A stretch of 59,325 nucleotides of DNA from Octopus bimaculoides (GCF_001194135.2 NC_068988.1:68584526-68643850); one strand, 5' to 3'. Counted from the stretch's first letter, positions 10,080-53,890 are shown. Numbers and translations: made by a program. The notes: generated by a model from the letters alone, not told the origin.

Positions 10080-10500
10080 ACATTTATTATCAAGGCTGCG
10101 AGTTTGCAGAATTCTTACACGTCGGAGAAAATGCTTTGTGGTCTCTTCTCCGGTTCTCTACGTTTTGTGTTCAAATGCTGCTGAGATAAATTTTGCCTTT
10201 CATATAGTTGAGATCGATGAATTATAGTACTAGAAAGAAATGGAGTCGATACAATCGATTACTCCCTCATGCCAAACTTTGAAACAATTCAGGCAGGGAG
10301 TTAGAGGAATCATAAGCACGCCGGATAAAATGCATAGCGTTCATTTCTTCCGGTTCTTTACGGTCTGAGATCAAATTACGTCGCGGTTGACTTTGCCTTT
10401 TTATTCTTTCGCGGTTGGTAAAATAAGAAGCACTTGAGAACTGGGTTCCATGTAATGGACTAAACTCTTCCTCCAAAATCTCATAGTGTATGAGAACTGA
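10080..10500 (+). mobile_element. Two adjacent degenerate SINE copies (family B)
   Basis: Both carry TTCAAAT..GACTTTGCCTTT..GTCGAT motifs shared with 42676-42890 and 48495-48692. Confidence 0.6.
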
Positions 10501-19670: not shown

Positions 19671-19870
19671 TGATTCTGTAAACTACGAAACAAATGGTCG
19701 TCTAAAAAGAGGAAGGTCGAGAGAAAAAGGTGGATGAGGAATTTTTTCCCAACCAAGTTCTTCGATCTTCTGTGATGTGATAGTTGAAACGCGTCTAGGT
19801 CCACAAAAGAATGCTATAAATGACTGTTTAATAACATTATAAATGTGGAAAATCTGCATTCTCCTGATTA
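19671..19870 (-). pseudogene. Mariner transposase C-terminal fragment
   Basis: ..TSQKIEELGWEKIPHPPFSLDL../DDHLFRSLQN, a variant of the YSPDL motif; runs into a gap. Confidence 0.8.
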
Positions 19871-19894
19871 TTATCAATACTATATATATATATA

Positions 19895-21960
19895 TCATCA
19901 TCATCGTTTAACATCCGTTTTCCATGCTGCCATGGGTTGGACGGTTTGACTGAGGTCTAGAGAGTCAGCTGCTGCACCAGGCTCCAATCTGATCTGGCAG
20001 TGTTTCTACAGCTGGATGCCCTTCCTAACACCAATCACCCAGACGGTGTACTGGGTGCTTATTACATGCCACGGGAACGGGATCCAGACAGGCGGGCCTG
20101 CCTGGCATCGGTCACGTTCGGATAGTTCGGATAGTGCTTTTTACGTTCCACCGGCACGGGGGCCAGTCAGGAGTTACTGGCATCGTTCACGTTCAGATGG
20201 TGCTATTTACGTGTCACCGGCACGGGAGCCAGGTACGCAGACTTGGCATCGACCACGTTCAGATGATGCATTTTACGTTCCACTGGCACGGCAGCCAGTC
20301 AGGAGGAACTGGCCACAGCTACGTTATTGGTTTTACTTGATTCAACAGGTTTTCTCAAGCATATCATATCGCCCGACGCATCAGGGGTATTCTTAACAGG
20401 GCCGGACATGCGTGGCTGCGATTTCAGCATATCTGCAAAGGTCCTGGTCTCCTATCACTACCTTTGTGAGGTCCAATTTTCGAAGGTTATGTTTCACAAC
20501 CTCATCCCATGTCTTCCTGGTTCTACCTCTACCACAGGTTCCTTTAACAGTTAGGGAGTGGTAAACTGCCTTCATTCATACGTAACACATCACAATACCA
20601 GCACAGTCGCCTCTTTTGTACACCACATTTGATGTTTCTTATGCCCAACTTTTCTCTCAGGGCACTTAAATTCTGTCGTGCATGCACACTGACATTACAC
20701 TTCCAGCGGATCATATTCGCTTCATTTCTTTCAAGCCTACGCCTGTCCTCAGCATTCATGGCCCATGTTTCACTGCCGTGTAGCATGGCAGTTCGCACAC
20801 ATGCATCATACAGTCTACCTTTCACCCTGAGCGAGAGGTCCTTAGTCACCAGCAGAGGTAGGAGTTCACTGAACTTTGCCCAGGCTATTCTTATTCTAGT
20901 CGCTACACTCTCAGAGCAACCAACCCCACTACAGACATGGTCACCTAGGTAGCAGAAGCTATTAACTACTTCTAGTTTCGGCCCCTGTCATGTGATGGAA
21001 TTTGTTTTCTGTACATCTTCAATGTTTATTGCTCCTGTGAATCTGCCACACAAAAACTATTTTCCCGGTTAACCTTCCTTTGATATTGCCGCACCTTTTA
21101 TGTGTCCATAGCTTTCACCGGAAACATCGCATGGAGTTTCTATACACACCTTTTCTACAGATCGAGCAGGGCCATCTACCTGAAGGGGATTGTGATTTGA
21201 CTGCCTTCCTACATACTAAGACTCTAGTTTTTGCTAGGTTAACCCTAAAGCTCATCGATTGTAGACCTTGCTTCCACACCTTAAACTTCGTCTCCAGTTC
21301 TGGCATTGACTTGGCTATTAAACCAAGGTCATCAGAATAGAGGAGCTTCCAGGGGCAGCCTGTCTTGAATTCCTCTGTTATCGCCTGGAGGGTTGTAGTG
21401 AATAAGAGGGGGCTGAGGACTGATCCTTAGTGAACCACTACTTCTACTTGGAATTCTTCACTATGCTCGTTGCCAACGCTCACCTTACTGCCAGTATCCC
21501 TGTACAGGACTTGTACAGCTCTTATCAACCGCTCGACTATCCCTAGTTTCCACATTGACCACCAGATAAGGGATCGGGAGACCCTGTCAAGGGCTTTCTC
21601 CAAGTCAGCAAAAGCCAACTACAGACGTTTATCTTTGACTAGGTATATCTCCTGCAGTTGCCTTACCAGAAATATAGCATCAGTGGTACTTCTGCCTGGT
21701 ACAAAACCAAACTGCATCTCATCTAGCCTAACTCCCTCCCTAATTAGTTGGGTTATGACCCTCTCTGTAACCTTCATCACCTGATCCAATAATTTGATAC
21801 CCCTGTAGTTATTTCTATCTAAAGCATAACCTTTCCCCTTGCAGCATTTGATTATGGTGCTACTACACCAGTTATTGGGTATAACTCCTTCGTGAACTAC
21901 CTGATTTACAATGCGGGTTACAAGAACATAACTCACACCTCCGATATTTTAAGCATCCTA
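19895..21960 (-). mobile_element. 5'-truncated RTE/RTEX-like LINE (RT with PHD-like insert, 3'UTR tandem repeats, (GAT)n tail)
   Basis: Fragments NYRGIKLL..QFGFVPGRSTTDAIF, AFADLEKALDRV, GSVLSPLLF, LLYSDDL, SFCYLGD, LHGSETW, RGRTRKTW. The 3'UTR contains GGATGCCCTTCCTAAC (plus strand), and the tail lies at 19895-19904. Multiple stops and frameshifts. Confidence 0.9.
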
Positions 21961-27657: not shown

Positions 27658-27740
27658 GAAGAAGAAGAAGAAGAAGAAGAAGAAGAAGAAGAAGAAGAAG
27701 AAGAAGAAGAAGAAGAAGAAGAAGAAGAAGAAGAAGAAGA
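27658..27740. repeat. (GAA)n microsatellite next to a gap
   Basis: Directly visible. Confidence 0.95.
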
Positions 27741-28920: not shown

Positions 28921-28983
28921 TTGGGGAAATTTCGAACCTGGGTTCTCATTCCTAAGATATTTTTCGATGTTATTATTATTATT

Positions 28984-29783
28984 CAGTAGTTTTATTTTTA
29001 AAACGTGCTTTCACTTCACCACTGAGTGCAGCTCTGTGTGCCTTGTGTGTGTGTGTATATTTGTGTTTATGTATGTGTGAATGTGTGTATGTANNNNNNN
29101 NNNNNNNNNNNNNNNNNNNNNNNNNNNNNNNNNNNNNNNNNNNNNNNNNNNNNNNNNNNNNNNNNNNNNNNNNNNNNNNNNNNNNNNNNNNNNNNNNNNN
29201 NNNNNNNNNNNNNNNNNNNNNNNNNNNNNNNNNNNNNNNNNNNNNNNNNNNNNNNNNNNNNNNNNNNNNNNNNNNNNNNNNNNNNNNNNNNNNNNNNNNN
29301 NNNNNNNNNNNNNNNNNNNNNNNNNNNNNNNNNNNNNNNNNNNNNNNNNNNNNNNNNNNNNNNNNNNNNNNNNNNNNNNNNNNNNNNNNNNNNNNNNNNN
29401 NNNNNNNNNNNNNNNNNNNNNNNNNNNNNNNNNNNNNNNNNNNNNNNNNNNNNNNNNNNNNNNNNNNNNNNNNNNNNNNNNNNNNTTCCAGGTCTTTGTA
29501 TTTTAAAAGTGTTTCCATTTCTTTTAGAGAAACGTTGTCATCTGCTGGTATTGATACATCAATTAGAAAGCATTTTTTTTCTTCATGATCTTTGACAACT
29601 ATATCTGGTCTATTTGCCTTAATTTCTCTATCTGTGTGTATTGGCATATCCCAGAGTATGGTTGCTTTCTCGTTTTCTGTGACCTTTTCTGGCGTGTGTT
29701 TATACCATCTTTTTTCTGTTGTTATTCCATAGTGTTGGCATAGCTTCCAGTGTATATAGGTCCCAGCTCTGTCGTGTCTGTGA
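28984..29783 (-). mobile_element. 5'-truncated younger R4/Dong-like element inserted in (AAT)n
   Basis: HRHDRAGTYIHWKLCQHY..WDMPIHTDREIKANRPDIVVKDHEEKKCFLIDVSIPADDN..KYKDLE is a REL endonuclease (PD..D..K). The 3'UTR matches 120-175. (ATT)n tracts lie on both sides. Confidence 0.85.
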
Positions 29784-29815
<32 letters not shown>

Positions 29816-29878
29816 CATTATTATTATACCATCAAAAAATACCTTAGTAATGAGAATCCAGGCTCGAAATTTCCCGAA

Positions 29879-38289: not shown

Positions 38290-40260
38290 GAATGTAGAAC
38301 ATAGACCATTACGTCCTGCCCCAATTCTTCGTTCTGTATTTTCTGTAACAGTTCCACTTCCTGATTTTTAATGCTTGTTTCTATCAACCGGTTCATCAAG
38401 TTTGACATCCAAATCACACTTCTCCTTCCTCTACTCCTCCCTTTCCCCTAAATCATTCCGCTTATCGTTAAATTCTCCAAGCCCTCTTTCCGCATCACAT
38501 GACCAAGAAAACTCCGTGGCTTAGCCCTTATCTCACGAAGCAGTTATCTATTTACCCTGGTCATCATTTTTCATTAAACACTTTGTTCATACTATCTTCA
38601 ATATTTTTCTTAAGAACCACATTTCACAGCTTTCTAATTACCTTCCCATTTCTGATGTCATAGATTATGACTCACAGTCATACATTAACACATGATAAAA
38701 ACAGCAGTTCAATATATGGATCTTACTTTTGATGATCAGAGTACATTTTCTCAAGATTTCATACATTTTTGGGAATGCAGGTTTTACCAGCACTATTCGT
38801 CTTTTGATATTCTTCACACATTTTGTGTCTTCTGTGATCAACTTTCCAAAGTGGTTGAATGATGATACCTGCTTAATGATTTGATTGTTAATTTTCAGCA
38901 TGCACTTTAGGCTTCTCTTCTTTCTCACCACCATACATTCTACTTTGCAATTTATGACTAGACTCTTCCATTCACTTTCTATGACCGCTTCAACCAGAAG
39001 TTCTGAAGTCTCTGAAGTTCTTTTTTCATTCTGCAAGGAAGACTGCATATCTTATGCATCTCATCTGCATATTTTGCGTTTGTAATCTTTCTGCCTGCTA
39101 CTCTAAGACTTTTTTTTCCTTTTTCAGTTCTCTTACGATTAATTTTCTATAGTAATTGAAGAAATCCGGTGACATAGCACATCCTTTTCTAAGCTTTCCA
39201 TATGCTAGTATATTTACTGCATTTTCCATCTACCTTTTTGCACGCTAATTGGTTCCAGTACAGACTCGGCAAGATTCGATAGATCTAAGTTACAATCCTT
39301 CAAATAACATGTCATATGTTACTTCGTTAAAGGCTCCTATGTAATTTATGACACACATGAAAATGTAGTTTTGCATCTCCACAACCCGCTCCGTTATCAT
39401 TCTCAATAGAAAATATTCCTTGTACTAGCACCATTTAAAAAAACAAACTGTTCAATTCTAATTCTCAGAATGTTCTTTATAACATGACACATGAGACTCA
39501 TCTGCGACATTGCTCATAGTCCCACACTCTTGTTTTATTTGGGAGTGCAATAAAGATGGATTTACTCAGATCTTCTTGACATTTCCCATCATTATTGATC
39601 TTTTTAATTAAATCTATCACTTTTCTAATTCCATATTCTTCTAATGATTTTATCATCTCAATGACAATTCCGTCTACCCCAGCAGCATTGGAGACAGGAA
39701 AACTAGACAAGGTTGCTCTGGCATTACAGAATAAATCTCTTATATATGCTGTCAATGTATTCAGTCTCCTCATCCAGCATGGCACCACCTTTTGCTCTGA
39801 TACACACGGCTTTTGAGCATCCTGACTTTCTGCCAAAGATCTCATTTATATTCAGATGTACATTGTATCCGACTGGACATTGCTTTTCAATTTTTTCACA
39901 CTATCCATTCAGCCAGGCCTCATTCGCCTCGCTACATTTCCGTTAAATCAGTCTATCCAGCTTCCTATACTCTTTGGATTTCCTGATACTGATCTTCTGT
40001 TTTTAACTCATTATCGAAAAGGTCTCCTTTGTCATCCATTTCCTGTTGATTCATATCTTTTATTTTGTACTACGGTGTTTTTCATTACTTCCCAGGTAAT
40101 TTCCTCACCATTATCAAACAGCTGATTAAATTTGATCTCCACATTTATGGAATAGCCCAGCTGTACCTCTGAATTATCCATTTGTTTCTGTTGTTCTTAC
40201 TCTCTTCAATTTCTTTAATTTACATAGGAATGTGTATACCACTGGTACATGATCACTCCC
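38290..40260 (-). mobile_element. Degenerate RTE-like LINE
   Basis: ..NAAGVDGIVIEMIK..SIFIALP.. and ..KQVSSFNHFGKLITED..IKRRIVLVK..VLMYDCES; many disruptions. Confidence 0.75.
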
Positions 40261-42404: not shown

Positions 42405-42435
<31 letters not shown>

Positions 42436-42461
42436 AAGAAGAAGAAGAAGAAGAAGAAGAA

Positions 42462-42492
<31 letters not shown>

Positions 42493-42678
42493 AAGAAGAA
42501 GAAGAAGAAGAAGAAGAAGAAGAAGAAGAAGAAGAAGAAGAAGAAGAACAAGAAGAAGAAGAAGAAGAACAAGAAGAAGAAGAAGAAGAAGAAGAAGAAG
42601 AAGAAGAAGAAGAAGAAGAAGAAGAAGAACAACAACAACAACAACAACAACAATAATAATAATAATAATAATAATACT
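42385..42678. repeat. Compound (TAA)n-(GAA)n-(CAA)n-(TAA)n microsatellite
   Basis: Directly visible; explains the poly-R/E/K ORFs. Confidence 0.95.
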
Positions 42679-42890
42679 GAAGGCACAAGGCCTGAAATTT
42701 AGAGAGTGGGGTCTAGTCGATTACATCTACCTCAGTGTTGTTTCAGTGGTACTTAATTTATCAACCCCGAAAGGATGAAAGGTAAAGTCGATCTCAGCAG
42801 AATTTGAACTCAGAACGTAAAGACGGACGAAAAGCTGTTTAGTATCCTTCTCGGTGCGGAAGCGCGTCTGTCAGCTTACTTCAAATGTTG
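42676..42890 (-). mobile_element. SINE family B
   Basis: CCCCGAAAGGATGAAAGGTAAAGTCGATCTCAGCAGAATTTGAACTCAGAACG is the reverse complement of the family core. Confidence 0.75.
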
Positions 42891-46331: not shown

Positions 46332-47447
46332 CCTGTATTATTATCTAAACTTCTCTATCTCTACTCCCTCTGTTATTGTCTAAACTTCTCTCTCTCTCTC
46401 TACTTCTCATGTCTACACGTTATCGCTTTTCTATTTGTTGCTTATTTTACACAGATATTATTACACGGCATCACTCTCACGTCTCTCTTTATTTTCTCCA
46501 TTCATTCTTTTTTTTTTCGATCACACATGTGATACTTTGCTTTGCTTTCTTCTTGCATTTCAAGATTTGCCCAAATCAAAAGGTCACAGACTAATTTTCA
46601 TTTTGGCATTCATCCTTGAGCACACATCTTTTTCGAAACGAAACTCTATCTACTTTCCTCTTTTTGTCCTGTAATTTTCTGTTATCATCCTGTTCTGTAA
46701 TGTTTATCTCAGCCAACCGCAACACAACTAACACCACTAGACTGAAATATTTTGTCAATGTGCGCAAATTGTAATGATATTTAATTGTCGGTTGATGAAG
46801 CGCGTTTACGCCTTTGTGTGTATTTTTGCTCTTTGATTTTGGTTTTCGTTTTTCTATACATTCTCCACATACAGTTACATTCATATATTTATATGCATAC
46901 AGATATGTACCTATGTGTGTATGTGTGTGTGCGCGCTTCTGTATATGTGTTCGTGCATGTGCCTGTGTGTGTGCGTGTGTATCTAGATATCCTAAGATTT
47001 GGCTAATGCGAATGGAGTAAATAATGACGAAAAACCGATAAATAAGTATTGATGATAAAGATGCTAGTAATATTTGTTGCGTCCGATTTCCACTGATAGT
47101 CAATACCACTGTTAAGCTGTCAGCACAAAGCCGTTAGTTAAGAAACTAAAATAACTATTACTAAAGTAGATAAGTATCTTTTGATGATACCACTGAAAAA
47201 AAAATTGCAAATTTACCATCAGCATTTAAATTACTTATGCACCGTATTGCTGTTAAAGTAGCGTATCATGCACAGTAAAACTACACAAGCCTTGCTTCCT
47301 CCAAATACTTCAAGCAGCTCGTTGTAATTGGTACCTTGCCTGACCGAAGTATTTCCTTATAATGCTGCAGGTATTACGATAAGGAAAGTGACAAATGGAT
47401 AATATGGAGAAGCTGAAAAAAGGAAGGCCGTGAGCAGAAAGAGAAAA

Positions 47448-47504
47448 GACAGAGGCAGATGCTGCATATGTCAACTCTGTTTGGAATTTCATCAGCAGCT
47501 TTGT
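47448..47504 (-). ncRNA. Degenerate type I hammerhead (array copy 1)
   Basis: CUGAUGA-AAUUC[CAAACA]GAGUU-GACA..; the left core and stem II are intact and the right core is mutated. Confidence 0.6.
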
Positions 47505-48052
47505 GATTGGGTACCTCTCCACGAACCCACTGATTTTAATGACTAATGTATACAGCGTAGATCAATTTTAATATGTAACAAATGTTTGCCAGCAACATCT
47601 AACATTAAACTATTTATGCTAACAATGTTAGGTTTCATTAATATAATGTTCTATAGAACATATTTATAGATTTTCTGCCAATACTATGTTGCTACGAATG
47701 TAAATGTTACGTCAGCTACATACATACATACATACATACATAATATGCTCGTGGTAAGAAAGAAACGAAACGGCTGTATGTGGTGAACATTTCAACTTAG
47801 CGTGCAGCCTTCTAATAATTGTATTGTGCCTTCCATCATTATCAACGATCACGCTTCTTATGAACCTATTGATATTATTGGCCAAACTTTTTGTAAACGA
47901 TATCTTATTCTTTAGTCTTATTATTAAACTGCTGACGTATTAATACTATTTTGTTTATTTGCAGTAGTTTATTTCATATAAAATTGTATACTGCGATGAA
48001 TGTAACCGTTACGTCAATCTATACACAATACTCCCGTGGGCAGAAAGGAAAG

Positions 48053-48118
48053 GAACAACTCTATGTGCAACGCATTTCAACTCTTACCGGAGTTTTCAGA
48101 GCAGCTAAGCAATGTTTC
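48053..48118 (-). ncRNA. Degenerate type I hammerhead (array copy 3)
   Basis: CUGAAAA-AACUC[CGGUAA]GAGUU-GAA-AUG[CGUUGCA]CAU-A; perfect 5-bp stem II. Confidence 0.55.
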
Positions 48119-48494
48119 TTAAACATTCACGAAGTCACAGCTTATAAATCTAACAACAGTGGCTACAATAAAATAGATAGACGAATCCAACACAACTAGA
48201 TTCCAGAAAACGTCACTTATGCAGAGTATCTATCCAGTTTAATTTAGCGACTAATATCATTGGATTTATAAGCTGTAGGTTCGTGCATAATTAATGAAAG
48301 AACACGTTGTTGATGAGATTTCACTGAGTTGAAGTGCCTTTTCTTTCTGTCCTAAAGCACATTTATATACAGACGTAATGTTTTCTCGTAACAGACTATT
48401 GCCTTTCGCTATATACTATACTACACTACTTGACAGTAATTTAACGAAAATATAATGTTAATATTCTAATGAGTTATTCGAACCAGCTGCCAAT

Positions 48495-48692
48495 GAAGTA
48501 TTAAGCACGCTAAAAAATGCTAAGTGGCATTTCGTCCGTCTTTAAGTTGAGTTCAAATTTCGCCTAGGTCGACTTTGCCGTTCATTCTTTCGGTGTCGAT
48601 AAAATAAATGCTAGTTGAACACTAGGGTCCATTTAATCAACTTATACCCACTACCCCAAAATTGCTGACCTTGTGCCAAAATGTGAAATCAA
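48495..48692 (+). mobile_element. SINE family B inserted within the hammerhead array
   Basis: GAGTTCAAATTTCGCCTAGGTCGACTTTGCC..GTCGATAAAATAA..AAATTGCTGACCTTGTGCCAAAA. Confidence 0.75.
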
Positions 48693-49026
48693 AATTAGAG
48701 GGTCCATACTGCAATAAATTTGTGGATATGTCAAAAAGGTGTGCAGCAGCTAACGAGACTGCAAGCAAAGCTGAAATTTTCAGCATATACAGTTGACGCG
48801 TTTATTTTCTGTGCACGTACATAGTGTATATAGTCGTAATATTTATAGTAAAATATTGTTTTAGTTAATTTTTAAATATCTTTTTCTATAGTTCATTAAA
48901 TCAAAGAAATAATATTCGAACTTGGTGCCAAAGATGTTAAATGTGCAATTTTATTTGTCCAGTATATTTTAGCCACAAATAGCTATAAGCTTATAAGCAG
49001 TGTGTTCATGGATAGTTCAGGAGAAT

Positions 49027-49083
49027 AAATAGCTGCTGACGAAACTTCAAGCAGAGTTGAATGTACAACATATAAATTTGTTT
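49027..49083 (+). ncRNA. Degenerate type I hammerhead (array copy 6)
   Basis: CUGACGA-AACUU[CAAGCA]GAGUU-GA-AUGU[ACAAC]AUAU-A; one A is missing from GAAA. Confidence 0.6.
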
Positions 49084-49602
49084 CCTCCTTTTTGTCGGCG
49101 TTCGTATTATGTATATAGACAGCAATGAAACGAAACATTGTAATACATTTGTGATTTCATATCCGACCTTTCTGCTAGTAAATTGTTGAATATACAATTT
49201 CGTATATGCAGTTACTGTAGTCACCAATATCAGTAACCTGATATTGTAGCGTATTCCTGTTTTGCGGCTCAGCTGAGGAGACACCAAGAGCTGTTAAAAT
49301 GTGCAGTGATTATTAGGTGTTTCCTATTTCTTTTTTTTTTTTTTTTGCAAGAGGATACTGAGTATATTAACGCAATGTTTACATTCGCTGTACCACATAG
49401 TGTTGGGACGAAATATGTAGATATAAACTATACAATATAATAGTATTGAAAAGAAACATTGTTTATATATGACCATTCTGAGTTAATATCTGAACATTCT
49501 GCCAAAAATTTCTAAAGATGAAAATTAGTCTATCCCGTTTGATTCTCACCCATTTATCAGAGGGTTTATAAGTAATGTGTTCCTTGGATAGTTAATGAAT
49601 GT

Positions 49603-49660
49603 ACAAAGTTGCCGTAGAGATACCAAACTGGGTTGAAATGTACTGCATATACAGCTGTTC
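49603..49660 (+). ncRNA. Degenerate type I hammerhead (array copy 8)
   Basis: CCGUAGA-GAUAC[CAAACU]GGGUU-GAA-AUGU[ACUGC]AUAU-A^CAGCUGUUC; the right half is intact. Confidence 0.55.
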
Positions 49661-49920
49661 TCTCTTTTTCTGTCCGTGATCATACAGTGTATATAAACGT
49701 AATGTTTCCATTAATTGTGTTATACAGAGTTACTTCATTTTTTTTTTAGATATGCTTTGTGGTACATTATACCAATGAGACAAAACACTGTTAAAACAAC
49801 ATTAATTCAGTATTAAATGTCAAGAAAGTGTTAAATATACATATTGGTCTATCCAGTTTCCTTTAGCCACTAATATTAATGGGTTTGTAAACAGTATAGT
49901 CGGGAAGAATCAAGGAAGCT

Positions 49921-49978
49921 GGACAACTACTGACGAGACTTCAAGCATAGTTGAAATATTCAGTATATGCAACTGTTC
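49921..49978 (+). ncRNA. Degenerate type I hammerhead (array copy 9)
   Basis: CUGACGA-GACUU[CAAGCA]UAGUU-GAA-AUAU[UCAGU]AUAU-G; the core is intact but the cleavage nucleotide is G. Confidence 0.65.
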
Positions 49979-50591
49979 TTTTTTTTATGTAAGCGAGAAT
50001 TCTGTGTATATAAACATACTGTTTACATTCATCGTAGAATACAGTCTTGGAAAAATATATTTTCATGAACTATAGTATATGATGTCAATAAAACAAAACG
50101 TTAACACTCAAGTAATTCAATACGCAAACTTACTGCCGACAAATTCATGTTAACTATGTATATTAGCGAAACCAATATTTTAGTCGTCAACATAGTTATA
50201 TTTACAAGTAGTGTGTCGGTTGATATTTAAGTAACCTGCAGAGCTTCTGACGCGATTCCATAAGCTCTGTTGAGATGCTCAGCAAATACACCTGTTCTTA
50301 ATTCTCCTAACAGTGAGCATAGTATTATATAAAGGTAATATTTATATTTGTCATATGGTGACGGCTAGGGAGCTCTAGATATATTGCTACAAGATGTATA
50401 GATACACTGCAATAAGAGCATTACAACACGCAGTTAACATACAAATACGAAACGCACTTAACGTACTAACATTTAAATATTGGAAAAGTCACCCCAAAAA
50501 CTGTTGAATTCGCAAATTTGTCTATCCAATTTACTTTATCAGCGTGATTTTTGTGCTTTATGCAGTGTTTTTGTGTATTATTGAGGAAAGT

Positions 50592-50648
50592 GCACAGCTG
50601 CTGAAGATACTCCAAATATTGTTAAAACGCACAGTATATACACTGTTA
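50592..50648 (+). ncRNA. Degenerate type I hammerhead (array copy 11)
   Basis: ACAGCUG-CUGAAGA-UACUC[CAAAUA]UUGUU-AAAA..AUAU-A-CACUGUU. Confidence 0.5.
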
Positions 50649-51755
50649 CCGTTTTGCTACCTGCGAGCAAATTGTATATGCGGATGTATTGTTTACATAA
50701 GTCGAAACATGCAGGTTTGGCTAAATGTCTATTGACATGTTCTATATCACATTACAGTAATGAAACACAAAGCACAAAAGACACAGCAGTAATTTAATGC
50801 ACATATATATATATATATATATATATANNNNNNNNNNNNNNNNNNNNNNNNNNNNNNNNNNNNNNNNNNNNNNNNNNNNNNNNNNNNNNNNNNNNNNNNN
50901 NNNNNNNNNNNNNNNNNNNNNNNNNNNNNNNNNNNNNNNNNNNNNNNNNNNNNNNNNNNNNNNNNNNNNNNNNNNNNNNNNNNNNNNNNNNNNNNNNNNN
51001 NNNNNNNNNNNNNNNNNNNNNNNNNNNNNNNNNNNNNNNNNNNNNNNNNNNNNNNNNNNNNNNNNNNNNNNNNNNNNNNNNNNNNNNNNNNNNNNNNNNN
51101 NNNNNNNNNNNNNNTGTATGTATATATATATGTATGTATGTATGTATGTATATAAAACATCAGGTCATATCATCTTACATATATATACAAATTCTCACAT
51201 CCACACGAAAAAGCATAGTTGGAAATAGAAATGATAAAGTTACTAAGACTGAACAAAAGCTGTTATTGGTAGAACGTATATTCATGGAACAGTAAGAAAT
51301 CAATATAAAACAAAAAGAAGAAAAAATTATCAGGATATTATTTCACAACAATAATGAAGTAAATATTAAGACAGATGTTATACGGCATCATTGAGAAACC
51401 TTGAAAGATATTATTGGCTTGTGCACATTATTATAATTCCTTCCTAGGCCCTATGACATATTCAAACACAAGAACGCAAAGATTGTAGTACGCGAATTTA
51501 ACTCATAAAATCTCTGAAGTACAGGAAAGTTTTCATCTGATTTTCTATTGAGTCTCTTGCCGCTGACGACAAAGATGATGATAATGAAGATGTCGAAGAC
51601 GATAATGAAGTTGAGGATGAGTAAGAGGACGTTGATGATAGTGGTTGTGTTGATAATGGTCGTATCAGTGATACAACTTTTTACCACAAATTCAAAATCT
51701 GGAATTCAATTTCTTCTCTTAGTCCAACTGTAATATAATATTCTGCAAGTAATCA

Positions 51756-52987: not shown

Positions 52988-53890
52988 ATGGATGGATAGG
53001 TGGCTGTATGGAAGGATGATGGATGGGTAGATGCACGGATAGATAGGTAGATAGACAGAGAGACAGACGAATGAAAAGATAGAGGTTTAGCTGACAGTCG
53101 CAAATTATAACGCTCCGTACCATAGTATAGCTTAATGATATTTTTATTTTGGTCGAGTCAGTCTCTTTTGCAGGTAAATGCACAAGGTCTTTACATTTCT
53201 TTTCATCTTTTCACTTCTTCATTTCCGTTTTTTGCTGTTTTTTGATTTTATTTTTGTTTTTGTTTTTCCACTTTTTCTTCTATCTCAGCTTCACCTTCAC
53301 TATCACCCAACGTCTCAAGATATAACTGGAGAAGGTCGTGTTGATAGCTGCATAATGCTTATCGCGTTGGAAAGATATAGAGCAGGAGAAAATGATTGCT
53401 CAAATTTTCCCAACTGGAAGTCAAACCATTTTTCATTGCTTTGGCAAGGACATTGGGAGTCTATGATCCAAATGTTATATTATCTCCGCAGATTTAGAGT
53501 CATTACCAGCATTACAACCTCCAGTCATGAATTTGAATAATCGAAGGAGAATTGTAAATTCCTGGAAACACTCTTCATCCAACTGCTTGTCTCTAAGTTA
53601 CACCTGAACCAAGATTGTATTTCAGTCATCAGTGAGGTCAGACTAGAAATACTTCCATTGAAAGAACACTAAAAAAGCAATTTCATTCGTTTCCTTTGCA
53701 TATAATTTTGTCGCGCAGACAGCACTGTTTGCACTCAATGAGTAAGTATTGTTAGTAATTATCAAATAAATGTCTTTAGTATATGTTTGTATAGTATGAA
53801 CTAATGAAACATGTTCATGTCTAGTGTATTTTACATCTGCTAGACTTCCTAGTTTAGTATTTAACAAAGGTGTTAGGCACAGGCGCAACT

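What the first reader, a model, noticed from the sequence alone, without database searches (positions are those of the whole stretch)
47400..50800. Hidden array of about 11 type I hammerhead ribozymes in ~320-bp units: a retrozyme-like system
Seen in sequence: a diverged unit recurs with cores at 47448(-), 47767(-), 48053(-), 48300, 48742, 49027, 49265, 49603, 49921, 50238 and 50592(+). The hand-built consensus is GAACAGCUG-CUGANGA-GACUC[CAAAYA]GAGUU-GAA-AUGU[NCAGC]AUAU-A^CAGCUGUUC, a complete type I hammerhead with a 9-bp stem I, a 5-bp stem II with a 6-nt loop, a 4-bp stem III and an AUA cleavage triplet. Stem II pairing survives different sequences in different copies (AAUUC/GAGUU, AACUC/GAGUU, AACUU/GAGUU). 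Established: metazoan non-LTR retrozymes are tandem repeats of a few hundred nt with one type I hammerhead per monomer, which produce circular RNAs, and the CAAAUA-type loop resembles Schistosoma Sm-alpha. Inference: this is a fossil array of a cephalopod retrozyme family that may be undescribed. No copy here has a fully intact core, so active relatives would lie elsewhere.
Basis: partly seen in the sequence, partly recalled or inferred. Interest (0 to 1): 0.92.

Follow-up and report, generated by a model that had tools for sequence, protein, structure and literature searches.

The report
Decayed hammerhead-ribozyme tandem repeat array
This 3.4-kb stretch is an old, dead array of eleven ~315-bp repeats that each once carried a self-cutting hammerhead RNA, a kind of mobile repeat (retrozyme) already known from many animals, so it is a real but fairly ordinary find.

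Summary
Eleven copies of a ~311-320-bp repeat lie at 47,426-50,798: three on the minus strand, eight on the plus strand, joined head to head near 48,190-48,204.

An unsupervised MAFFT majority consensus contains a complete type I hammerhead: ACAGCUG-CUGACGA-GACUC[CAAGCA]GAGUU-GAA-AUGU[UCAGC]AUAU-A^CAGYUGU. A textbook descriptor matches it. The same descriptor gave 0 hits in 20 Mb of random sequence.

- Each catalytic position is held by 8-10 of the 11 copies.
- Every copy has at least one different core lesion.
- The 12 catalytic positions are conserved 87%, against 72% for the unit (composition-matched p about 7.5e-5).

- There is no covariation. The stem II variants are one-sided transitions.
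- Objective stem I is 7 bp, not 9.
- The base of helix II is G.U in all copies.
- The hammerhead fold is not the predicted minimum-energy fold.
- Neither Rfam nor a model built from four validated retrozyme hammerheads detects any extant copy.

Best reading: a fossil non-LTR retrozyme (hammerhead satellite) array in a probable octopod genome, K2P 0.25-0.5 from its consensus. It is a new member of a known kind. No intact or independent copies could be retrieved; there is only a weak lead in Argonauta hians. Interest is moderate to low.

The parts
47426..50798 (.). Whole array: 11 diverged units of a ~311-320-bp repeat. GC is about 0.33. The only ORF is a spurious 93-aa one.
   Evidence: nhmmer hits; unit alignment and consensus; ORF list; ORF not on record.
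47426..48190 (-). Minus-strand arm: two full units and one 3'-truncated unit. It ends about 35-45 nt past the last cleavage-site equivalent.
   Evidence: nhmmer; reading of the sequence.
48204..50798 (+). Plus-strand arm: eight units. It runs into an (AT)n microsatellite and an assembly gap (N run 50,828-51,114).
48186..48218 (.). Head-to-head junction. Both arms start at about unit position 225-259 and read outward. The arms are no more alike than any other pair of units.
   Evidence: nhmmer model coordinates; inverted repeat I6; identity matrix.
47449..47502 (-). Hammerhead remnant m47495. Lesions: A14>C, H17>G. Helices paired: I 4/7, II 5/5, III 3/4.
47770..47822 (-). Hammerhead remnant m47815. 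Lesions: C3 deleted, G5>U, G8>A.
48055..48108 (-). Hammerhead remnant m48099. Lesions: G5>C, A6>U, G8>A.
48303..48337 (+). Hammerhead remnant p48310. Lesion: C3>U. Helix III, the cleavage site and the stem I 3' strand are deleted.
48743..48796 (+). Hammerhead remnant p48750. Lesion: G5>A.
49029..49081 (+). Hammerhead remnant p49036. Lesion: one A of GAA-A deleted. Helices II and III are fully paired.
49266..49320 (+). Hammerhead remnant p49273. Lesion: G12>A.
49605..49658 (+). Hammerhead remnant p49612. Lesions: U4>C, A6>U. Stem I 6/7, stem III 4/4.
49923..49976 (+). Hammerhead remnant p49930. The only core lesion is H17>G, at the cleavage-site nucleotide. Stem I 4/7.
   Evidence: Top (non-significant) hit of the independent model R1.
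50240..50295 (+). Hammerhead remnant p50247. Lesions: A9>C, A14>G.
50594..50647 (+). Hammerhead remnant p50601. Lesion: G12>A. Loop 2 is CAAAUA.
48505..48712 (+). SINE-like interspersed repeat inserted into unit p48310, replacing about 50 nt of the unit. It post-dates the array.
   Evidence: Alignment gap. Two further diverged copies in the window, at 42,682-42,835 (-) and 10,327-10,456 (+).
49686..49714 (+). Example of the second conserved block of the unit (consensus TGTGTATATAGACGTAATGTTTACATTC, 30-60 nt 3' of the cleavage site). It is the best-conserved stretch outside the ribozyme. Function unknown.
   Evidence: Repeat families D6, D8, D9 and D11; sliding conservation 0.67-0.73.

Best explanation
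This is a fossil array of a non-LTR retrozyme, also called a hammerhead satellite. It is a non-coding, AT-rich tandem repeat of ~315 bp whose ancestral monomer encoded one type I hammerhead ribozyme.

Inferred life cycle, by analogy with the coral, mussel and axolotl elements tested in PMC7229834:
1. The array (or its source locus) was transcribed as a multimer.
2. Each hammerhead cut after the A of AUA^C and released ~315-nt monomers.
3. A host RNA ligase closed the monomers into circles.
4. A reverse transcriptase borrowed from an autonomous element copied the circle into tandem cDNA, which integrated. Penelope-like elements are the published candidate.

Shown here: the repeat, its anatomy, the complete hammerhead in the consensus, excess conservation of the catalytic nucleotides, and the decay of every copy.

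Inferred only: transcription, self-cleavage, circularisation and retro-mobility.

At this locus the system is dead. Every copy carries a lesion at a catalytic nucleotide or at the cleavage-site nucleotide. Units are 63-79% identical to their consensus, and a SINE-like element has since been inserted.
For: (1) Homologous units. nhmmer E-values run from 1e-10 to 1e-73, including copies not used to build the profile.

(2) Complete hammerhead in an unsupervised consensus. It has CUGACGA, GAA, A15.1-U16.1, H17 = A (AUA obeys the NUH rule), and helices I/II/III of 7/5/4 bp in type I order.

(3) Descriptor test. My descriptor finds the consensus at strict settings and finds all four experimentally validated retrozyme hammerheads at loose settings. 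Random sequence gave 0 hits (strict) and 1 hit (loose) in 20 Mb. The chance of a hit in a 622-nt search is therefore below about 1e-4.

(4) Ancestral core was intact. Each catalytic position is supported by 8-10 of 11 copies, and the lesions fall at mostly different positions in different copies.

(5) The catalytic core is better conserved than the rest. The 12 positions chosen in advance are conserved 87%, against 72% for all unit columns (composition-matched permutation p = 7.5e-5) and 70% for non-core columns of the ribozyme block (p about 9e-4).

(6) Class features from PMC7229834 are met: ~300-bp tandem monomers, GC 0.33 (<0.45), no ORF, one type I hammerhead per monomer.

(7) The oddities have precedent. 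Axolotl HHR_Amex2 has a U.U at the base of helix II and a GUA site and still self-cleaves. Axolotl Ax330 has a 4-bp helix II with a CAAAAA loop, close to CAAGCA here.

(8) The head-to-head arrangement of 5'-truncated arms matches the insertion pattern drawn for Penelope-like elements (PMC8557442, Fig. 2 legend).
Against: - No extant copy is recognised as a hammerhead. Rfam gave no hit at gathering score, at E<=10 over 4.2 kb, or at E<=10 in 81-nt searches of the two least damaged copies.
- A model built from four validated retrozyme hammerheads gives 11.6 bits, E 0.55, for its best copy. That equals a noise hit elsewhere in the window.
- There is no covariation: 2 double changes against 3.7 expected, and 72.7% of cells paired against 73.8% in shuffles.
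- 10.1-11.1 is G.U (U in all 11 copies) instead of the usual G-C.
- The hammerhead fold of the consensus is -7.6 kcal/mol against an MFE of -12.5, in which GCUGA pairs with loop 3 UCAGC.
- The circular monomer is only modestly structured (66% paired, z = -2.3).
- The array ends do not coincide with cleavage sites.
- There is only one locus in the window.
- No independent intact copies were found.
- Nothing here shows transcription, cleavage or circles.
Confidence: 0.8

Rival explanations
1. The repeat is not a separate retrozyme. It is a tandemised piece (pseudo-LTR or tail) of a Penelope-like element, whose own hammerhead and insertion mechanism produced the head-to-head tandem structure.
For: Penelope-like elements carry type I hammerheads in pLTRs, form partial tandems, and often have an inverted 5'-truncated copy upstream (PMC8557442). 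A 2026 preprint argues that animal retrozymes derive from PLE pLTRs. The array here is head to head, with both arms 5'-truncated at nearly the same unit position.
Against: There is no reverse transcriptase or GIY-YIG reading frame inside the array; the only ORF is a spurious 93 aa. The few large ORFs tested in the window gave only one weak RVT_1 hit, at 21.6 kb. PLE hammerheads are described as minimal variants with very short helices, whereas this one has a 4-bp helix III with a 5-nt loop and a 5-bp helix II.
Confidence: 0.1
2. It is an ordinary satellite or tandem duplication, and its consensus looks like a hammerhead only by chance.
For: No covariation. No covariance-model hit on any copy. 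The hammerhead fold is not the MFE.
Against: The descriptor gave 0 hits in 20 Mb of composition-matched random sequence, yet the consensus passes with margin at 7/5/4 bp. The catalytic positions, chosen before looking at conservation, are significantly better conserved than the rest (p = 7.5e-5). Unit size, composition and tandem form are those of the known class.
Confidence: 0.04
3. The palindromic arrangement is a secondary fold-back (inverted) duplication of one end of a simple direct array, unrelated to how the element integrates.
For: The two arms begin within about 15-30 nt of the same unit position, and there is an 80%-complementary 35-nt inverted repeat across the junction.
Against: Mirror-image units are no more similar to each other than any other pair: 52% over whole units and 70% over the junction-proximal 95 nt, inside the 60-79% range of all pairs. 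An inversion would therefore have to be as old as the array. This concerns only the arrangement, not the nature of the repeat.
Confidence: 0.3

Closest known systems
Metazoan non-LTR retrozymes (Cervera & de la Pena 2020, PMC7229834): coral Amil224, mussel Mg353, axolotl Rtz331/Rtz353
   Same: Tandem monomers of a few hundred bp (here ~315; mussel ~350, axolotl 330/350). One type I hammerhead per monomer. GC well below 45%. No coding capacity. Helix II of 4-5 bp with a 6-nt CAA-type loop, like axolotl Ax330. A weak base pair at 10.1-11.1 and an A at the cleavage site, as in axolotl Ax353.
   Different: Every copy here is inactivated, and the units are far more diverged (45-65% pairwise). Helix III is longer (4 bp plus a 5-nt loop) than the 1-2 bp plus tetraloop of the mussel and axolotl motifs. 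There is no recognisable sequence similarity outside the catalytic core. No RNA evidence. Only one locus was seen.
Newt/salamander satellite 2 and Schistosoma Sm-alpha hammerhead repeats (classical type I hammerhead satellites)
   Same: ~330-bp tandem satellite units with one type I hammerhead. The loop 2 type CAAAUA, which I recall for Sm-alpha, is seen in one copy here, and the consensus is CAAGCA.
   Different: Those are abundant, homogeneous, transcribed and catalytically active. This array is a short, decayed relic. The Sm-alpha loop comparison rests on memory, not on a test made here.
Penelope-like element pLTR hammerheads
   Same: Type I topology, tandem arrangement, and a head-to-head inverted 5'-truncated copy (PMC8557442).
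   Different: No RT/GIY-YIG ORF. The hammerhead is canonical-sized, not the minimal variant.
Rfam RF00163 Hammerhead_1
   Same: The consensus has all the conserved core nucleotides and the three helices in type I order.
   Different: No extant copy reaches even E<=10. The consensus itself could not be scored with the tools available.

Membership tests
Type I hammerhead ribozyme | Catalytic core C3 U4 G5 A6 N7 G8 A9 ... G12 A13 A14 | tested here: met
   Met by the unsupervised majority consensus, with each position held by 8-10 of 11 copies. Not met by any single extant copy.
Type I hammerhead ribozyme | A15.1-U16.1 pair and a cleavage triplet N-U-H | tested here: met
   A15.1 is present in 10/11 copies, U16.1 in 10/10, and H17 = A in 8/10. 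The triplet is AUA.
Type I hammerhead ribozyme | Three helices around the core, with the open ends in helix I | tested here: met
   The consensus has helices I/II/III of 7/5/4 bp in the order I5'-core-II-GAA-III-H-I3'. In the copies, 72.7% of cells are paired, against 26-48% when the 3' partners are slid by 1-3 columns. That control is biased, because the structure was derived from the consensus.
Type I hammerhead ribozyme | G10.1-C11.1 pair closing helix II | tested here: not met
   11.1 is U in all 11 copies. 10.1 is G in 7, A in 3 and U in 1. An active natural precedent for a weak pair here is U.U in axolotl HHR_Amex2.
Type I hammerhead ribozyme | Compensatory covariation in the helices | tested here: not met
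   2 cells with changes on both sides, against 4.5 expected. 484-486 of 500 shuffles reach the observed value. Eleven decayed copies give little power.
Type I hammerhead ribozyme | Score at or above the Rfam Hammerhead_1 gathering threshold | tested here: not met
   No hit for any copy at gathering score or at E<=10. The consensus cannot be submitted to that tool.
Type I hammerhead ribozyme | Loop 1-loop 2 tertiary contact | not testable with these tools
   Helix I can extend past an internal loop in the context fold, but the contacts cannot be assessed.
Type I hammerhead ribozyme | Self-cleavage | not testable with these tools
   Needs in vitro transcription. The predicted hammerhead fold is 4.9 kcal/mol above the MFE.
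Metazoan non-LTR retrozyme | Short tandem repeats, monomer 150-450 bp, from dimers to large multimers | tested here: met
   11 units with a modal spacing of 317-320 bp.
Metazoan non-LTR retrozyme | One canonical type I hammerhead per monomer | tested here: met
   One remnant per unit, at the same unit position in all 11.
Metazoan non-LTR retrozyme | Low GC (<45%), no LTR, PBS, PPT or ORF | tested here: met
   Consensus GC is 0.325. The only ORF is one spurious 93 aa.
Metazoan non-LTR retrozyme | Highly self-paired monomeric circle | tested here: inconclusive
   Circular consensus: -67.2 kcal/mol, 66% paired, z = -2.3 against mononucleotide shuffles. The consensus of a decayed array is noisy.
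Metazoan non-LTR retrozyme | Expression as linear and circular monomer RNA | not testable with these tools
   No transcriptome access.
Metazoan non-LTR retrozyme | Many dispersed arrays in the genome (mobility) | tested here: inconclusive
   One array in 59 kb. About 160 kb of LINE-bearing contigs fetched from other assemblies held only one weak relative, in Argonauta hians L023: 13.1 bits, E 0.009, with a second copy 553 nt away. The source genome itself could not be searched.
Metazoan non-LTR retrozyme | Co-existence with Penelope-like elements in the genome | not tested
   No PLE was identified in the window. The literature reports PLE (Naiad) remnants in Octopus spp..
Penelope-like element | RT plus GIY-YIG endonuclease ORF between pLTRs | tested here: not met
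   No such ORF in or next to the array.

The most novel reading that the evidence does not exclude
This locus is the worn-out trace of an octopod retrozyme family that is still active elsewhere in the genome. That family would produce abundant ~315-nt circular RNAs from a hammerhead with an unusual G.U (or A-U) closing pair in helix II and a long helix III. The head-to-head form of the array would record integration by Penelope-like machinery. That would give cephalopods an undescribed class of ribozyme-made circRNAs.
Probability: 0.25. Interest if true: 0.55.

Novelty: new member of a known kind. Interest (0 to 1): 0.35.

Why it matters
If the family has living members, it would extend ribozyme-processed circRNA retroelements to cephalopods. 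It would also give a natural hammerhead variant with a wobble pair at 10.1-11.1 to test.

As it stands, the locus adds one more lineage to a class already described as widespread but patchy in animals. It is also a worked example showing that covariance-model scans (Rfam) miss old arrays whose ribozyme survives only in the consensus.

The excess conservation of the catalytic nucleotides suggests that the units diverged partly while self-cleavage still mattered. That bears on how such arrays grow.

Tried and rejected
1. **Rfam scans.** Whole window at gathering score; 4.2 kb at E<=10; 81-nt windows on the two best copies. No hammerhead hit in any, only noise such as miRNA and sRNA models.
2. 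**Independent covariance model R1.** Built from four validated retrozyme hammerheads taken from the supplement of PMC7229834. The best copy scores 11.6 bits, E 0.55, no better than an unrelated site at 53,607-53,638 that lacks helix II.
3. **Covariation count.** None found.
4. **Looking for relatives through spurious ORFs.** The exact ORF is not on record. A 296-aa chimera of all six reading frames of the consensus found nothing at E<=10.
5. **Exact-pattern scan of metagenome contigs for the core-helix II-GAAAU motif.** 17 hits, none with unit homology or a hammerhead.
6. **Nine contigs fetched through relatives of the window's LINE reverse transcriptase (about 160 kb).** Only the Argonauta hians locus gave a weak match. 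It is not a clean hammerhead.
7. **Fold-back duplication as the origin of the inverted arms.** Not supported.
8. **Organism identification by protein names.** The only named hit is Argonauta hians. The second search returned no names.

Full report
**What is there**

The window is an AT-rich eukaryotic draft assembly. About 11% of it is N, in 19 gaps. It is full of microsatellites and LINE remnants.

Between 47,426 and 50,798 lies a repeat that Tandem Repeats Finder missed. The repeat finder shows it as many short families spaced 317-327 bp apart.

A profile HMM built from seven plus-strand units recovers the other four copies, which were not used to build it. Their E-values run from 2.8e-34 to 2.5e-10. 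The profile finds nothing else in the window.

The array has two arms:
- Three units on the minus strand, with core heptamers starting at 47,495, 47,815 and 48,099.
- Eight units on the plus strand, at 48,310, 48,750, 49,036, 49,273, 49,612, 49,930, 50,247 and 50,601.

The arms meet head to head at about 48,190-48,204. Each starts near unit position 225-259 and reads outward.

The right end runs into (AT)n and an assembly gap. The left end stops 35-45 nt after the last cleavage-site equivalent.

Unit p48310 is interrupted by a ~210-bp SINE-like element (48,505-48,712). That element has two more diverged copies in the window, so the array is older than that insertion.

**Age**

Units are 45-65% identical to each other and 63-79% identical to their consensus (K2P 0.25-0.53). 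Mirror-image units across the junction are no more alike than any other pair. The inversion is therefore as old as the array, or was made at integration.

**Is there a hammerhead?**

Three MAFFT alignments give the same majority consensus over the relevant 54 nt:

ACAGCUG CUGACGA GACUC CAAGCA GAGUU GAA AUGU UCAGC AUAU A CAGYUGU

This reads as helix I 5' strand, core, helix II hairpin, GAA, helix III hairpin, H17, helix I 3' strand. That order is type I.

- A descriptor I wrote from the textbook definition matches it with helices of 7/5/4 bp. The definition is CUGANGA, GAA, A15.1-U16.1, H17 not G, and three helices.
- The same descriptor, loosened, finds all four experimentally validated retrozyme hammerheads printed in the supplement of PMC7229834.
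- In 20 Mb of first-order Markov sequence of matching composition, the strict form hits 0 times and the loose form once.
- No site in the real window passes either form.
- Each catalytic position is held by 8-10 of the 11 copies. The lesions are scattered: G5A, G12A (twice), A13 deleted, H17G (twice), U4C+A6U, A9C+A14G, and others. That is the pattern expected from independent decay of an intact ancestor.

It is. The 12 catalytic positions, fixed in advance by the definition of the ribozyme, agree with the consensus in 87% of cells. The comparisons are:
- All 300 well-occupied unit columns: 72%. Random 12-column sets reach 87% with p = 3.4e-4; composition-matched sets with p = 7.5e-5.
- The 48 non-core columns inside the ribozyme block: 70% (p about 9e-4).

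This is hard to explain if all units were born identical and then drifted. It suggests that part of the divergence arose while cleavage was under selection.

**What does not support the reading**

- *Covariation is absent.* 72.7% of cells are paired, against 73.8% in shuffles. Two cells have changes on both sides, against 4.5 expected.
- *Helix I is shorter than claimed.* It has 7 contiguous pairs in the objective consensus, not 9.
- *The base of helix II is non-canonical.* 11.1 is U in all copies, so the pair is G.U (A-U in three copies), not G-C.
- *The hammerhead fold is not the minimum-energy fold.* It scores -7.6 kcal/mol, while the MFE (-12.5) pairs GCUGA of the core with loop 3 UCAGC.
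- *Rfam reports no hammerhead for any copy at any threshold tried*.
- *A model built only from the four validated retrozyme hammerheads does no better.* It puts copy p49930 on top, but at 11.6 bits, E 0.55, level with noise.

The ribozyme therefore exists here only at the level of the reconstructed ancestor.

**What it is**

The anatomy matches the class defined in PMC7229834:
- Canonical type I hammerheads in animals sit in tandem repeats of about 300 bp with GC below 45%.
- They have no LTR, PBS or ORF.
- They are transcribed, self-cleaved and circularised into 170-400-nt circRNAs.
- They are thought to be mobilised by Penelope-like elements.

The class is reported in cnidarians, molluscs (mussel), rotifers, flatworms, annelids, arthropods and amphibians.

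The oddities seen here have precedents in active members. Axolotl HHR_Amex2 has a U.U at the base of helix II and cleaves after GUA (22% in 1 h, and better as a dimer). Axolotl Ax330 has a 4-bp helix II capped by CAAAAA.

The head-to-head pair of 5'-truncated arms resembles the insertion structure drawn for Penelope-like elements. It fits the proposed mobilising machinery, but it is not proof.

**Organism and novelty**

The only named relative of a LINE fragment in the window is from Argonauta hians. The SINE-like insert resembles, from my memory, the common octopus SINE, and it has a partial match in the Argonauta locus. An octopod origin is therefore likely but not proven.

I found no paper describing cephalopod retrozymes. 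The giant squid genome paper does list 235 Rfam Hammerhead_1 loci, so type I hammerheads in cephalopods are not new.

**Relatives elsewhere**

Attempts to find independent copies mostly failed. The one lead is in Argonauta hians:
- L023:19,814-19,852 reads CTGATGAAATACAAAGCTGAGTTGAAATAACTGCAC.
- It matches the core-helix II-GAAA part of the profile at 13.1 bits, E 0.009 in 160 kb.
- A second copy lies 553 nt downstream, at the edge of the fetched DNA.
- It does not fold into a clean hammerhead and may be a decayed cousin.

**Verdict**

It is a dead new member of a well-described class. Its membership rests on a consensus and on conservation statistics, not on covariation, model scores or RNA data. 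Interest is 0.35.

Noticed in passing
window 49,686-49,714 and the same unit position in other copies (48,366-48,383, 48,827-48,844, 49,363-49,380, 50,007-50,024, 50,326-50,343, 50,677-50,694): A second conserved block, TGTGTATATA(G/A)ACGTAATGTTTACATTC, lies 30-60 nt 3' of the cleavage site. It is the best-conserved stretch of the unit (pairwise column identity 0.67-0.73) and contains a TATA-like word. It could be an internal promoter or a recognition element. Newt satellite 2 is, from memory, driven by an internal snRNA-type promoter.
   Followed up: partly
window 48,186-48,218: Head-to-head junction of the two arms. Both are truncated at nearly the same unit position, and the arms are not more similar to each other than to other units. 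This resembles the inverted 5'-truncated copies of Penelope-like element insertions.
   Followed up: partly
window 48,505-48,712; 42,682-42,835 (-); 10,327-10,456 (+): A SINE-like interspersed repeat with three diverged copies (about 74% identity). One copy is inserted in the array. There is a 49-nt match in the Argonauta hians locus L023:14,410-14,458.
   Followed up: partly
L023 (Argonauta hians, GCA_054771915.1 BAAFZT010000001.1) 19,795-19,876 and 20,347-20,429: Two copies, 553 nt apart, of a motif that matches the hammerhead core, helix II and GAAA part of the window's unit (13.1 bits, E 0.009). It is not a clean hammerhead, and the locus ends before a third copy could be seen.
   Followed up: partly
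window 20,544-21,936 (-) and 38,665-39,845 (-); 28,979-29,818 (-): Broken LINE-type retrotransposon reading frames. There is a weak RVT_1 hit at 21,619-21,936, with relatives at 50-74% identity in many ENA contigs. None looks like a Penelope-like element.
   Followed up: partly
window 20,125-20,325: A 66-bp tandem repeat (2.8 copies, 67-77% matches) in the only GC-rich stretch of the window (GC 0.47), next to the LINE remnant.
   Followed up: no
window 42,406-42,676 and 27,658-27,740: Very long pure trinucleotide runs: (AAG)75 followed by (AAC)9 and (AAT)8, and (GAA)28.
   Followed up: no
window 53,607-53,638 (-): ACCUCACUGAUGA-CU-GAAAUACAAUCUUGGUU scored 11.6 bits with the retrozyme-hammerhead model. 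It has no helix II, so it is a chance match.
   Followed up: yes
consensus hammerhead (e.g. window 49,605-49,658): The word CAGC(U)G occurs three times in the motif: in both strands of helix I and in loop 3. As a result the predicted MFE pairs the catalytic GCUGA with loop 3. This may be an inactive alternative fold, or a handle for dimeric (double-hammerhead) cleavage.
   Followed up: no
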